Assembly (NCBI GenBank): GCA_053919585.1
Contig: CM132791.1
Strand: one strand, 5' to 3'
DNA length: 64,000 nt
From: Euprymna scolopes
Lineage: Eukaryota
Part shown: positions 4,968 through 62,704 of the stretch, piece after piece
Layout of the letters: each line of letters starts with the position of its first letter
How positions within the stretch are numbered: the stretch's first letter is position 1
The notes under the pieces: model-generated
The model's input: only the letters and a program-made list of their open reading frames with translations
Database searches by the model: none
What the model was told of the DNA's origin: nothing
Position numbers and translations under genes: made by a program

Positions 4968-5459
4968 CAAGAGCTGTTCAAGAAGTAATGCATCCTATTA
5001 TTTTAACTCAAATAAAAGTTGAAGAGTTGCTAAGACGAGAATGGTACTATTAAAACAAGCGACTTTCTGAGCTCTATAATTAAGTATTTTACATAGTCAC
5101 AACATTTCTCAATACAGATCTCACACCGATAGTGTGATTGCTGTGCATAGGCGTCCGGAACGCTCTTTGTTCTACTTCTGTTGCTACTCTGAAATCATCG
5201 AACACATATTCTAACTGTGCTGGCATCAACTGCATTGGCTTCGTAAACGTTAAATAAACGCCGATGAATGGGGAGCAGTTCAATGTTCCATGCGTGGAGA
5301 AATGCAATGATGTGTATTTGCTTCTGATGTTCGTCCATTACGGGGAGGGTGTGCTTTCCTAGAGTCTAATACCGTAAATATCTTCAGCAGTTCGCAATCC
5401 CTTTGATCCATTTTTGTGGTACTTAAAAAAGGAGCGAGTTACATTTGGAACGTCTTTCG
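4968..5459 (-). mobile_element. Internally deleted mariner transposon with transposase N-terminal remnant
   Basis: TA-flanked degenerate TIRs (caagagctgttcaagaagtaa / rc cgaaagacgttccaaatgtaa). Minus-strand translation from 5338 gives MDEHQKQIHIIAFLH...IHRRLFNVYEANAVDASTVRICVR*F...RSGR, a mariner HTH region. Confidence 0.8.
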
Positions 5460-40111: not shown

Positions 40112-40383
40112 ATTACTTTTGCGGAAATTTTATTCCGACGTAATGGAAAGATTTTAAAGAACACACCAAATTATATGTTCATAAACGTTTCATCTTGAAG
40201 TCTTGAAATAAAAACGAACTCTAAATGAACATATACATATAATGAACATATATATAAATATATAACTTGGTACGTACGTTTGAATCTTTCTATCATTGCG
40301 GAATATTATATGGCCCCCAAAATACACACACACACACACATATATATGTATGTGTCTATATATATTTATATATAAAATATATT

Positions 40384-40444
40384 TTAGTCATCGACATACA
40401 GAACTGTTTCGTTGTATCACAACTCATCAGTGCCGCTAGACTAA
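40384..40444 (-). ncRNA. Type I hammerhead ribozyme (predicted cleavage between 40397 and 40396)
   Basis: UUAGUC-UAG-CGGCA-CUGAUGA-GUUG-UGAUA-CAAC-GAA-ACAG-UU-CUGU-A/UGUCG-AU-GACUAA: complete core, stems I (with internal loop), II and III, and a GUA triplet. Confidence 0.92.
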
Positions 40445-40449
40445 CACCT

Positions 40450-40522
40450 CTCCCAAGCCAAGGATCGAACCTAGAACCGTCGTGATGACAGTCGGCAGTC
40501 CTACCCCCTTGACTACGGAATC
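40450..40522 (-). promoter_or_regulatory. tRNA-derived (Asp-like) Pol III internal promoter; not a functional tRNA
   Basis: A-box-like TAGTCAAGGGG with D-stem GTC/GAC, loop CTGTCAT, and B box GGTTCGATCC within a T-arm. The acceptor and anticodon stems do not pair. Confidence 0.7.
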
Positions 40523-40705
40523 GGTGGCCGAAATTAACCTGTCCGAACGATTATTTAAATAAACATTCGTCCGCTACTCGTAGAGGGCTCAAACGTTTGT
40601 GTGTAAACAAATCGCGAGCTTCGCATTATTTCAGCTAAATTAAGTAGCGAGTAAGATAATTTACGAGAGTGCTCTACCAAAGAGGGGAGCTTTATAAAAT
40701 ATATT

Positions 40706-40766
40706 TTAGTCATCGACATACAGACCTGTTTCGTTGTATCACAACTCATCAGTGCCGCTAGACTAA
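40706..40766 (-). ncRNA. Type I hammerhead ribozyme, second copy (predicted cleavage between 40719 and 40718)
   Basis: Same fold as 40384-40444; the only difference is stem III loop GU instead of UU. Confidence 0.92.
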
Positions 40767-40771
40767 CACCT

Positions 40772-40844
40772 CTCCCAAGCCGAGGATCGAACCTAGAACC
40801 GTCGTGATGACAGTCGGCAGTCCTACCCCCTTGACTACGGAATC
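40772..40844 (-). promoter_or_regulatory. tRNA-derived Pol III internal promoter, second copy
   Basis: As for 40450-40522. Confidence 0.7.
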
Positions 40845-42027
40845 GGTGGCCGAAATTAACCTGTCCGAACGATTATTATATATATATATATGTGTGTGTA
40901 TATGTGTATATATAACTGTAATCGTATGAAATTATTTTTACATAATAACCTGGATTAAAGTTAAACGTACAAAAGCTAATTAACATAGTTTAATTCCACT
41001 GTAATAAAAACAACATGCATTTTGAACTCGTTCCTATCTTATAAAACAATCTACAATTGATTTTCTAGACTGGGCTTCTATGCTTGCACAATAGTAAGTC
41101 TTCTTTAATCCACTTTTGATGTTAAGTTGTATAAAAGAGTGAACTTGATAAAAAACGGATTTCGTTCTTACATAGGAGTTTTTCGATTATCGATTTGGGA
41201 TACTCGTCAGAGGCATTCCGATACAAAACCTACGTAAGAACATTAGCACACACGTTCGTGTGAAATTGAAAAAATAGGCTCAGACGTGTTCGAGTCCATA
41301 AGGAAGGAAGTCACACGTAACGCTCATTTTATGTATTAATAGAGATACATGTAGATGATTAGTGCTAAAGTACTTTGTATAAATACCTTAAGAGGTTTAT
41401 AAAAGTATTTTTGGCTTATTAAATTACTATTATGTGTTGCTCCCAAGTATTCACAATTTTCGACCTCCTCAGAATAAACTTTAATAAGCAAAACGATTGT
41501 GCCTGGACGATAGCATGATAGAAGACATTTAAAGGAAGAATCATAAAAATATCCTTATATCATATCATATGTTTGACGCACTATACACCAGATCCCGAAA
41601 TCCTTGTGGCTACTAATGCATTAGAACCTACATATTAAACAAAGGGGGATATTTATCACTAAACATTGGTTAACACGTGACGTACTTTACTAAATGTAGA
41701 ATAATATTCCTCATAAATCAAGTAAACAGCAATTAGTTTAATATTTGCGGTTATCAATTTCATCGAATTCCTCATGAAAGACATGTTGCGTTGAAAACCA
41801 ACCATAAGCAACTGCTAAAAGCATTAACAATGCAAACTGCAAACAGTCTACGTAGTGGGGGACTGTTTTCCTCAATTACAATTATAAAATCGCGTTTCTT
41901 CCTTCAGGAAATGTTAGTCATACTGATGAATCATTTACACTTTTCTATAACTATGCAACTTGAAGACATATTGTTTGCTTCCCTACAAACTAAGTTTGAA
42001 GGAAAAAATATTGTGTAACGCAACTAG

Positions 42028-62081: not shown

Positions 62082-62704
62082 ATTATTATTCATCGGATTA
62101 CTGTTCTCATCTTGAGTGAGATTTTCACACCCTTTCGGTTGATATAACCTCCGATCTTCTTCAGATGTTTTTTGTCGAACTCAGGGACGTTTCTGTCGAC
62201 TTCGGGAATTTGGACGGAATTTCGAACGGACCCTTTATTTACTTCACGGGGGTAGTGTGCTCTTGGTCCGTAAGCCATGACTGGATAGAGATCCTAAGCA
62301 ATTTGCAAATTTATATTTCGGTCGCCCATACTGAGGATTGAACCTTCAACCTTCAGGAGATTATCAAGGCTCCTAAAATTCGTACTAGAATTGTCCGCAA
62401 GGATCCGTGGCGCATTTGTTAGTGTACTGGGAAAATAAATTTTAAAAGTGATATCCTCCTGTAGATTGAAGGTTCAATTCTATGTGTGGGCGACCGAAAT
62501 ATACATTTGCTAAAGACTCAAGACCTCTATCCAGTCATGGCTGACGGAACAAGAGCACGCTGTCTCAGTGAAATTCCGTCCAAATTTCCGAGTTCGACAG
62601 AAACATTCTAGAGTTCGACACCTGACGAAGATCGGAGATTATATCGATCTAAACGTTGTGAAAATCACACTCAAGATGAGAACAGAAGTCCGATGAATAA
62701 TAAT
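62082..62704. mobile_element. Head-to-head inverted pair (62082-62366 / 62449-62704) of a tRNA-headed, hammerhead-bearing short retroelement
   Basis: The arms are diverged reverse complements. Each has a B-box-like ggttcaa(t)tc near the centre and a decayed minimal hammerhead (62126-62167 on -, 62618-62660 on +). An A-box-like gtggcgcatttg lies at ~62407. Confidence 0.8.

What the first reader, a model, noticed from the sequence alone, without database searches (positions are those of the whole stretch)
40371..40877. Tandem hammerhead ribozymes 322 nt apart: a retrozyme predicted to yield a small circular RNA
Seen: two copies of a complete type I hammerhead on the - strand (CUGAUGA and GAAA core, GUA triplet). 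Stem I is CGGCA/UGUCG plus UUAGUC/GACUAA across an internal loop, stem II is GUUG/CAAC and stem III is ACAG/CUGU. The cleavage sites are exactly 322 nt apart in a partial tandem repeat set in TA-rich microsatellite, and the copies are almost identical. Established: metazoan non-LTR retrozymes are short tandem units with type I hammerheads that give linear and circular monomers; Penelope-like elements are their proposed mobilisers. Inference: this is a young, possibly active family producing a 322-nt monomer or circRNA. I cannot tell whether this family has been described.
Basis: partly seen in the sequence, partly recalled or inferred. Interest (0 to 1): 0.9.

Follow-up and report, generated by a model that had tools for sequence, protein, structure and literature searches.

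The report
Hammerhead retrozyme inserted in TA microsatellite
This is one recent insertion of an abundant, non-coding mobile repeat of a mollusc genome that carries a self-cutting hammerhead RNA motif in every 322-base unit; the kind is already known from mussels, corals and flukes, but its thousands of copies show unusually clearly how such elements are pasted into the genome.

Summary
On the - strand, 40877->40371 is 1.57 copies of a 322-nt unit. Each copy carries a complete type I hammerhead, with cleavage sites at 40719|40718 and 40397|40396. A strict descriptor finds only these two sites and none in 300 shuffled windows, although Rfam's cut-off is not reached.

The unit belongs to a very young family (about 0.08% from consensus) in a 5.9-Gb mollusc genome. 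The genome holds at least 2,600 insertions and at least 5,400 internal unit junctions.

The new result is the insertion footprint. All 21 independent loci examined end at the same base, 26 nt past the cleavage site and 3 nt after the unit's only T4 run, and all abut (TA)n. Their 5' ends fall at 18 different unit positions and favour TA/AT. Lengths run from under one unit to more than 15 units. This is target-primed reverse transcription of RNA longer than one unit into TA microsatellites.

The unit also has tRNA-type A and B boxes 44 nt apart, as in schistosome Sm-alpha, but no tRNA is called.

RNA libraries hold the sequence, but cleavage and circles are not shown, and no partner reverse transcriptase was found. 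The scan has noted this element type elsewhere in this genome. Verdict: a real retrozyme, a new member of a known kind.

The parts
40371..40877 (-). Whole insertion: 1.57 units of the 322-nt retrozyme. The 5'-truncated end is at 40877 and the family-wide fixed 3' end is at 40371.
   Evidence: same 3' end as 20 other loci; TA-rich microsatellite on both sides.
40706..40767 (-). Hammerhead copy 1 (type I): stem I distal and proximal, core, stem II and stem III. Cleavage is predicted between 40719 and 40718.
   Evidence: sequence; descriptor hit, 0 in 300 shuffles; identical to the family consensus.
40384..40445 (-). Hammerhead copy 2. Cleavage is predicted between 40397 and 40396. It has one private change, G>U in the stem III loop (- strand, at 40403); core and helices are intact.
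40746..40752 (-). CUGAUGA core box of copy 1 (copy 2: 40424-40430).
40729..40732 (-). GAAA core box of copy 1 (copy 2: 40407-40410).
40784..40837 (-). tRNA-like segment of copy 1: A-box-like TAGTCAAGGGG (40827-40837) and B-box-like GGTTCGATCC (40784-40793), starts 44 nt apart. Copy 2 is at 40462-40515.
   Evidence: composite motif only here, 0 in 300 shuffles; the pattern was chosen after seeing the sequence. ARAGORN and Rfam call no tRNA.
40693..40699 (-). Tail TTTTATA. 40696-40699 is the only T run of 4 or more in the unit (possible Pol III terminator). 40693 corresponds to the base at which all insertions of the family end. In copy 2 (40371-40377) it is the actual end of the insertion.
   Evidence: (T runs).
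40556..40692 (-). Non-repeated part of the unit body at this locus; origin unknown. It is conserved at about 80-90% in sister subfamilies.

Best explanation
The stretch is one insertion of a young, non-autonomous retroelement of the non-LTR retrozyme type, with a SINE-like tRNA-derived segment. Each 322-nt unit holds a body of about 165 nt, a tRNA-like segment with A and B boxes, a canonical type I hammerhead, and an AU-rich tail with a T4 run. Shown from sequence: the element spreads by target-primed reverse transcription into (TA)n microsatellites. cDNA synthesis always starts at the same place in the RNA, the AU-rich tail 23-26 nt past the ribozyme cleavage site, where it can pair with TA-repeat DNA. 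Synthesis then runs for anything from a fraction of a unit to many units and stops at variable points, and the 5' junction is sealed at TA/AT microhomologies. Because the start point lies inside the repeating unit and copies exceed one unit, the template must be longer than a unit or endless. [quoted passage not shown] The window copy would release one 322-nt monomer from any transcript that crosses both ribozymes.
For: The hammerhead is complete and non-random. Family size: at least 238 full-unit matches at 99% identity on more than 25 chromosomes; 5,462 internal junctions; 2,639 junctions of tail to (TA)n (1,773 exact). In 21 independent loci the 3' end is identical and is followed by (TA)n in 21 of 21. 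The 5' flank is a TA run in 17 of 21. The 5' ends lie at 18 different unit positions, and 13 of 21 start with TA or AT against 15% expected. Lengths are 1.4-6.8 units. A second, rarer start register lies in the neighbouring AUAUAU tract (136 exact copies), which fits priming by pairing with TA-repeat DNA. The family is young: 83 units show 21 variant instances, about 0.08%. Sister subfamilies with the same architecture, ends and target number 6,315 copies. RNA libraries from four studies hold the unit. The unit has 44% GC, and stem I forms in the circular minimum-energy fold. From the literature: metazoan retrozymes are tandem units of 150-450 bp with type I hammerheads that give circular RNAs (PMC7229834); more-than-unit cDNA from a circular template has been proposed (PMC4209133, PMC7761336); Naiad elements insert preferentially in (TA)n, and the CX2-5CxxC linker was proposed to cause a microsatellite bias in Neptune (PMC8557442).
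Against: No cleavage, monomer or circle was observed. Reads and contigs show no pile-up of ends at 40719/40718 or 40397/40396 and no joints. 81% of the single-cell reads run on into unrelated sequence, so many come from copies embedded in other transcripts. Because the flanks were masked, DNA carry-over in the RNA libraries is not excluded. Rfam's thresholds are not reached. The T4 run sits between successive ribozymes, so Pol III starting at the A/B boxes should mostly stop before making a multimeric precursor. No reverse transcriptase is nearby and no partner element was identified. Long arrays could have grown after insertion by unequal exchange. On chromosome C1 about three quarters of insertions are shorter than about one unit, and continuation beyond one unit is more likely than reaching one unit, which a single processive mechanism does not predict (hand tally). 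The circular fold is only modestly more stable than shuffles (z = -1.7).
Confidence: 0.8

Rival explanations
1. The retroelement and the TPRT footprint are the same, but no circular RNA is involved. The templates are linear: Pol III or Pol II read-through transcripts of existing arrays, or several monomer RNAs joined by template switching of the reverse transcriptase. The hammerhead plus tail then serves mainly as the 3' recognition module for a Penelope-like enzyme, as a SINE tail does for its LINE.
For: The A/B boxes and the T4 run form a Pol III cassette like the schistosome Sm-alpha SINE-like elements (PMC2770079). About 74% of insertions on C1 have no internal junction. Hammerhead and tail are nearly invariant between subfamilies whose other parts differ by 10-25%, with the caveat that L051-L058 were selected by that very stretch. 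Penelope-like elements themselves insert as partial tandems (PMC8557442).
Against: The body of the unit lies downstream of the only T4 run and upstream of the promoter, yet it is always retained, so templates must cross the terminator. Insertions of up to 17 units or more with only singleton differences between units are most simply made from one endless template. Related retrozymes do accumulate circles in mussel, coral and axolotl (PMC7229834).
Confidence: 0.17
2. This is ordinary satellite DNA spread at the DNA level, by unequal exchange, re-integration of extrachromosomal circles, or Helitron-type carriers that also target AT. The hammerhead is a passenger.
For: The organisation is tandem and array lengths have a heavy tail. 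AT/TA targets are also typical of Helitrons (from my own knowledge of the field).
Against: Thousands of dispersed sites share one exact 3' end while 5' ends vary within the unit. DNA circles would re-integrate at random phases. Helitrons have a fixed 5' end and their own termini, and none is present between the unit and the (TA)n flanks.
Confidence: 0.02
3. The hammerhead is a chance or dead motif in a repeat with no ribozyme activity.
For: Rfam does not reach threshold. Helix III is weak. Single old copies carry core mutations, for example GAAG in L042.
Against: All 15 core positions and all three helices are intact in the consensus and in both window copies. The descriptor gives 0 hits in 300 shuffles. 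The motif is retained in several subfamilies.
Confidence: 0.01

Closest known systems
Metazoan non-LTR retrozymes (Cervera and de la Pena 2020, PMC7229834; review PMC7761336), e.g. the Mytilus galloprovincialis, Acropora millepora and Ambystoma mexicanum families
   Same: Tandem units of about 170-400 bp, one type I hammerhead per unit, GC below 45-50%, no coding capacity, from dimers to large multimers, thousands of dispersed copies, and co-occurrence with Penelope-like elements proposed as mobilisers.
   Different: This family has a tRNA-like A/B-box segment directly upstream of the ribozyme and a T4 run after it. Its insertions show one fixed 3' end inside the unit, strict (TA)n targets and variable 5' truncation. 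The review states that metazoan retrozyme repeats show no conserved motif pointing to the mobilising element. RNA circles have not been shown for this family.
Schistosome Sm-alpha / Sj-alpha SINE-like retroposons with hammerheads (Ferbeyre 1998 and Laha 2000, as cited in PMC2770079)
   Same: A tRNA-related segment and a type I hammerhead in one short, very abundant non-coding element that is also found in tandem.
   Different: There is no sequence relation. tRNAscan-SE calls most Sm-alpha copies as tRNA-Gln-like (PMC2770079), whereas here ARAGORN and Rfam call no tRNA. The (TA)n target and fixed 3' end were not compared, because I could not read the original papers.
[quoted passage not shown]
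   Same: Hammerheads sit near the 3' part of an element that inserts by TPRT, often as partial tandems and often into microsatellites including (TA)n.
   Different: Here the hammerhead is canonical, with helix III and a long helix I, not minimal. The element encodes no RT or endonuclease. Naiads, the best-documented (TA)n users, lack canonical hammerheads.
Plant LTR retrozymes (PMC4918200)
   Same: Non-autonomous, hammerhead-flanked, and giving circular RNA intermediates.
   Different: The plant elements use type III hammerheads in LTRs, have PBS and PPT, 4-bp TSDs, high GC, units of 600-1000 nt, and Ty3/Gypsy mobilisers. None of these is present here.

Membership tests
Hammerhead ribozyme, type I | Conserved core C3 U4 G5 A6 N7 G8 A9, G12 A13 A14, the A15.1-U16.1 pair, and H17 at the cleavage site | tested here: met
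   CUGAUGA, GAAA and GUA are all present in both copies and in the family consensus.
Hammerhead ribozyme, type I | Three helices around the core, with helix I open (5' and 3' ends in helix I) | tested here: met
   stem I is 5 bp plus 6 bp across an internal loop, stem II is 4 bp with a 5-nt loop, and stem III is 3-4 bp. Helix III is weak and could extend to 10 bp in a dimer.
Hammerhead ribozyme, type I | Score at or above the Rfam gathering threshold (RF00163, 34 bits) | tested here: not met
   One search gave no hit. One search gave only Hammerhead_3 at 22.1 and 19.2 bits. Other hammerhead families of the same genome do pass, at 43-57 bits.
Hammerhead ribozyme, type I | Mg2+-dependent self-cleavage at the predicted site | not testable with these tools
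   This needs in vitro transcription. Read data showed no ends at the sites, but the libraries are unsuited to show them.
Metazoan non-LTR retrozyme | Short (about 150-450 bp) tandem units, each with a type I hammerhead, low GC, non-coding, and no LTR, PBS or PPT | tested here: met
   periods of 321-334 nt; GC 44%; only a 64-codon ATG-started frame, across a family with indel variants.
Metazoan non-LTR retrozyme | Dispersed copies made by retrotransposition | tested here: met
   fixed 3' end, variable 5' truncation, (TA)n target, and 5' microhomology.
Metazoan non-LTR retrozyme | Accumulation of linear and circular monomer RNA | tested here: inconclusive
   the sequence is present in four RNA libraries, but there are no ends or joints, no silent-DNA control, and contigs cannot show circles in a tandem repeat.
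tRNA-derived SINE / Pol III unit (Sm-alpha-like) | tRNA-related head with A and B boxes at tRNA spacing | tested here: inconclusive
   The A box matches 7 of 9 specified positions (8 of 9 in sister subfamilies), the B box matches 8 of 9, the starts are 44 nt apart, and the T arm is intact. ARAGORN and Rfam find no tRNA.
tRNA-derived SINE / Pol III unit (Sm-alpha-like) | Head at the 5' end of the element, with insertions beginning at the Pol III start site | tested here: not met
   The tRNA-like part lies in the middle of the unit, at unit positions 178-231 of 322. The 5' ends are scattered with no pile-up near the expected start.
tRNA-derived SINE / Pol III unit (Sm-alpha-like) | Pol III terminator downstream | tested here: met
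   The only T run of 4 or more in the unit is at unit positions 316-319, 3 nt before the shared 3' end. Whether it acts as a terminator was not tested.

The most novel reading that the evidence does not exclude
A currently active, tRNA-promoter-bearing retrozyme whose 322-nt circular RNA is copied by rolling-circle target-primed reverse transcription. Priming would be by the 3' end of nicked (TA)n microsatellite DNA at one fixed AU-rich site beside the ribozyme, so that each event lays down a ready-made satellite array of up to dozens of units. That would be a direct RNA-circle route to the birth of satellite DNA, with a target preference that names the mobilising Penelope-like clade.
Probability: 0.35. 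Interest if true: 0.7.

Novelty: new member of a known kind. Interest (0 to 1): 0.45.

Why it matters
Retrozymes are known, and so are tRNA-related hammerhead elements. What is still open is how metazoan retrozymes are mobilised and by which enzyme. The 2020 review states that their repeats show no motif that points to the partner. This family is young and abundant enough that the insertion footprints are still clean: one start point for cDNA synthesis inside the unit, a strict (TA)n target, TA microhomology at variable 5' ends, and copies from a fraction of a unit to many units. That makes the rolling-circle reverse-transcription model, and the identity of the partner (a (TA)n-preferring Penelope-like clade), directly testable in one genome. 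It also offers a concrete case of tandem arrays being seeded by retrotransposition. If the host is a decapodiform cephalopod, as genome size and chromosome count suggest, these elements may be part of the large 'unclassified' repeat fraction reported for such genomes.

Tried and rejected
1. Rfam gave no call for hammerhead or tRNA at the gathering or E-value level. The many miRNA 'hits' are TA/CA microsatellite artefacts.

2. ARAGORN found no tRNA in the window or in eight loci.

3. The RF00163 search of the whole genome scored only 74 of about 900,000 candidates. It returned other hammerhead families, not this one, so it says nothing about this family.

4. I tried to build a coverage profile along the unit from four 36-mer probe counts, to look for a step at a Pol III start site. 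The counts (6,026; 3,204; 1,490; 8,833) are not monotonic, because subfamilies differ in those segments. The attempt was uninformative.

5. An unbiased sample of terminal junctions could not be fetched.

6. Covariation could not be tested. The family is too uniform, and loci L051-L058 were selected by the hammerhead itself. One old, decayed copy (L033) shows compensatory changes in stems I and II, but this is a single case.

7. Read laying gave no ends, joints or strand proof.

8. ORFs of 130 aa or more in the window have no Pfam match, so there is no RT nearby.

9. Minimum-energy folding of the 76-nt ribozyme alone does not reproduce the hammerhead and is no better than shuffles. This is expected for hammerheads and was not used as evidence.

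10. The Helitron and DNA-circle readings were rejected on end geometry.

Full report
OBSERVATION.

On the - strand the stretch 40877->40371 consists of a 185-nt segment (40693-40877), 137 nt of unique sequence, and the same 185-nt segment again (40371-40555). The two segments are 99% identical with a period of 322 nt (sequence).

Each 185-nt segment contains a textbook type I hammerhead:
- helix I in two parts: UUAGUC/GACUAA and CGGCA/UGUCG, separated by a UAG/AU internal loop
- CUGAUGA
- helix II, GUUG/CAAC, closed by UGAUA
- GAAA
- helix III, ACAG/CUGU
- the GUA cleavage triplet

I wrote a descriptor that demands all of these elements. It hits only at these two places in the 64-kb window, on either strand, and never in 300 dinucleotide-preserving shuffles. 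A much looser pattern gives 2 hits against 0.21 expected.

There are two caveats. Helix III would have a 2-nt loop if all four pairs formed, so in a monomer it is 3 bp plus a tetraloop. The 10 nt ACAGGUCUGU can also pair with a second copy to give the extended helix III of a double hammerhead. Rfam does not call the motif: there is nothing at gathering level, and only sub-threshold matches to the permuted Hammerhead_3 model, at 22.1 and 19.2 bits against a cut-off of 48.5.

THE FAMILY.

The window comes from contig C9 of a 5.9-Gb assembly of 925 contigs. Run labels place it in a mollusc. More than 45 chromosome-sized contigs and the genome size suggest a decapodiform cephalopod, but that is my inference only.

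The 322-nt monomer has at least 238 matches at 99% identity, out of 1,075 candidates. Many lie in head-to-tail arrays of period 322 on more than 25 chromosomes.

Exact-pattern counts for the whole genome:

| Junction | Copies |
|---|---|
| Internal unit junction (ribozyme tail followed by the start of the next unit) | 5,462 |
| Ribozyme tail running into (TA)n, up to 1 mismatch | 2,639 |
| Ribozyme tail running into (TA)n, exact | 1,773 |

Arrays with periods of 321, 323, 324, 328 and 334 nt also occur, each uniform within an array. These are subfamilies.

A sister lineage has a tail that reads GACUACAAAUAUA. It has 6,315 copies within 2 mismatches over 54 nt. It shows the same unit organisation, the same kind of ends and the same target.

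Among 83 full units from 22 places I found 14 variable sites and 21 variant instances, about 0.08%. The sample is biased to the best matches, and the C800 array duplicates the C15 array. The window's full unit carries three private changes, one of them a CpG transition. Its partial unit matches the consensus.

THE INSERTION FOOTPRINT (the main new result).

I fetched 20 further loci on 17 chromosome-scale contigs and mapped the element boundaries.

- 3' end: all 21 insertions, the window's included, end at the same base...GACUAAAAUAUAUUUUAUA. This is 26 nt past the cleavage site and 3 nt after the only T run of 4 or more in the unit.
- 3' flank: the next bases are a (TA)n run in 21 of 21. (TA)n runs cover 1.9% of the window.
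- 5' flank: it is a (TA)n run in 17 of 21.
- 5' ends: they lie at 18 different positions of the unit. 13 of 21 begin with TA or AT, against 15% expected from the unit's composition. Three positions recur in two loci each.
- Lengths: 1.38 to 6.75 units. The C15 array has 17 full units.

This is the signature of target-primed reverse transcription: a fixed start of first-strand synthesis, variable 5' truncation, and microhomology at the 5' junction, with (TA)n as the target.

A rarer class ends 10 nt earlier, in the AUAUAU tract, with 136 exact copies. Both start registers are places where the RNA can pair with TA-repeat DNA. This suggests that the nicked microsatellite itself primes synthesis by annealing.

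The start point lies inside the repeating unit. In arrays the same sequence simply continues into the next unit. The template must therefore cross the T4 run and exceed unit length, so it is either a multimer or a circle.

I made a hand tally on the first 140 Mb of C1. 31 of 42 tail-to-(TA)n junctions have no internal junction beside them, meaning an insertion shorter than about one unit. 11 have between 1 and 14. Eleven further arrays of 1 to more than 30 junctions have less regular 3' flanks. The tail of that distribution is heavier than one constant stopping probability predicts. Templates are therefore heterogeneous, or long arrays also grow after insertion.

THE tRNA-LIKE SEGMENT.

Directly upstream of each hammerhead lie TAGTCAAGGGG and GGTTCGATCC. 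These match the Pol III A box in 7 of 9 specified positions and the B box in 8 of 9. Their starts are 44 nt apart, the spacing found in tRNA genes, and the T arm is intact. Sister subfamilies have a better A box, TGGTCGAGTGG.

A relaxed composite pattern occurs only at the two copies in the window and never in 300 shuffles, but I chose that pattern after seeing the sequence. ARAGORN and Rfam call no tRNA in the window or in eight related loci.

Together with the single T4 run, this looks like a Pol III cassette, as another first-reader note on the same place suggests. [quoted passage not shown]

Two things do not fit a plain SINE. The tRNA-like part lies in the middle of the unit, not at its 5' end. 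The 5' ends of insertions show no pile-up at an expected start site. A Pol III transcript that stopped at the T4 run would also lack the body of the unit, which is always retained. Pol III use is therefore possible only with read-through, and it is untested.

RNA.

Twenty runs from nine studies hold the sequence, six of them recorded as RNA. I laid four runs on 40250-41000: single-cell raw reads, two poly(A)/oligo-dT libraries, and one rRNA-depleted library of a differently labelled organism.

All four cover 40380-40873 and nothing outside it. However, the flanks were skipped as repeats, so there is no silent-DNA control. There were no joints and no places where molecules begin or end.

81% of the raw reads run on into unrelated sequence. 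Many reads carry the sister subfamily's letters, for example A in the helix III loop and the ...GACUACAAAUAUA tail. Depth is highest over the hammerhead, the part shared by most subfamilies. Contigs cross the cleavage site.

This shows that the sequence is present in RNA preparations. It does not show discrete monomers, cleavage or circles. In a tandem repeat, contigs could not show a circle in any case.

OTHER PROPERTIES.

The unit has 44% GC. As a circle its minimum free energy is -86.6 kcal/mol, with z = -1.7 against shuffles (13 of 200 shuffles fold as well), and helix I forms in that fold. The longest ATG-started frame in a tandem of units is 64 codons. The one-base and larger length variants among subfamilies argue against coding. 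No ORF of 130 aa or more in the window has a Pfam match.

INTERPRETATION.

The element meets every sequence-testable criterion of a metazoan non-LTR retrozyme as defined by Cervera and de la Pena (PMC7229834). The kind is documented in a mussel, a coral and an axolotl, with circular RNAs shown there. The model that a reverse transcriptase runs round a circular template to give more-than-unit cDNA was proposed for Penelope-like elements and for retrozymes (PMC4209133, PMC7761336).

The same review states that metazoan retrozyme repeats show no conserved motif that would reveal the mobilising element. Here the (TA)n target and the fixed priming site supply such a clue. (TA)n preference is described for Naiad Penelope-like elements, and the CX2-5CxxC linker that Naiads share with Neptune was proposed to cause a microsatellite bias in Neptune (PMC8557442). 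A 2026 preprint argues from vertebrates that retrozymes derive from Penelope pseudo-LTRs (10.64898/2026.07.22.740005).

I therefore read the stretch as a real and recent retrozyme insertion. The retrotransposition mechanism (TPRT into TA microsatellites from a longer-than-unit template) is shown by sequence. Self-cleavage, circularisation, rolling-circle copying and the Penelope-like partner are inferred.

The main rival keeps the same retroelement but uses linear read-through or template-switched RNAs instead of circles. DNA-level satellite spread and a chance motif are effectively excluded by the end geometry and the shuffle tests.

NOVELTY AND SCORE.

This is a new member of a known kind. 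Other notes of this scan describe tRNA-headed hammerhead elements elsewhere in the same genome, and two follow-ups filed them as further examples of the schistosome/mussel type. I did not use those notes as evidence.

The part worth a specialist's attention is the clean, genome-wide insertion footprint. It makes the mobilisation mechanism testable.

Noticed in passing
window 62082-62704: A head-to-head inverted pair of another repeat with a B-box-like GGTTCAATTC and CUGAAGA/CUGACGA...GAAA-like strings. Another first-reader note reads it as a second tRNA-headed hammerhead family. My strict hammerhead descriptor does not hit it, so it is at best a minimal or decayed Penelope-type motif.
   Followed up: partly
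G000:C8:10432194-10435515 and G000:C3:89840417-89842627: Other hammerhead families of the same genome pass the Rfam Hammerhead_1 cut-off (48-57 bits) and sit in arrays of about 410-nt period. The C3 array switches strand in the middle, giving head-to-head arrays.
   Followed up: no
L044 (G000:C12:132577600-132585200), around 2740-2760 and 4970-4990: A 6.75-unit insertion plus its (TA)n tract is bracketed by a 17-nt inverted repeat (16 of 17 complementary). The target (TA)n seems to have been the centre of a longer palindrome.
   Followed up: no
L039 (G000:C17:36852200-36858500), 5' junction: About 32 nt of unrelated, non-TA sequence lies between the upstream (TA)n and the 5' end of the element. 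It may be filler or a template switch at the 5' junction.
   Followed up: no
G000:C800:4997-13471 versus G000:C15:119964967-119973441: The unplaced contig C800 carries the same 17-unit array, with the same boundaries, as C15 in reverse orientation. It is probably a haplotig or an assembly duplicate.
   Followed up: partly
window 40656-40692 (- strand), start of the unit body: The body begins AAGCUC...GGUAGAGCAC, which resembles the D-arm/A-box part of many tRNAs. This may be a second, more decayed tRNA-derived piece. It rests on recall of tRNA consensus only and was not tested.
   Followed up: no
window 40320-40376 and 40863-40932: Sub-threshold Rfam matches to mir-3149, mir-297, mir-1277 and others are TA/CA microsatellite hairpins, not miRNA genes.
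   Followed up: yes
runs X7, X19 and X20 (organisms B and C): Runs labelled as other organisms hold 37-70% of the element's 31-mers, and contigs of X20 match stretches of 69-133 nt with 0-1 differences. The family is therefore near-identical under other species labels. With coded names I cannot tell whether these are close relatives or mislabelled or mixed samples, or whether the sequence is conserved.
   Followed up: no
unit consensus, from the ATG inside CUGAUGAG: A tandem of units has a stop-free stretch of 105 codons and a 64-codon ATG-started frame that begins inside the ribozyme core and crosses the cleavage site. It is probably chance, since subfamilies differ by 1-nt indels.
   Followed up: partly
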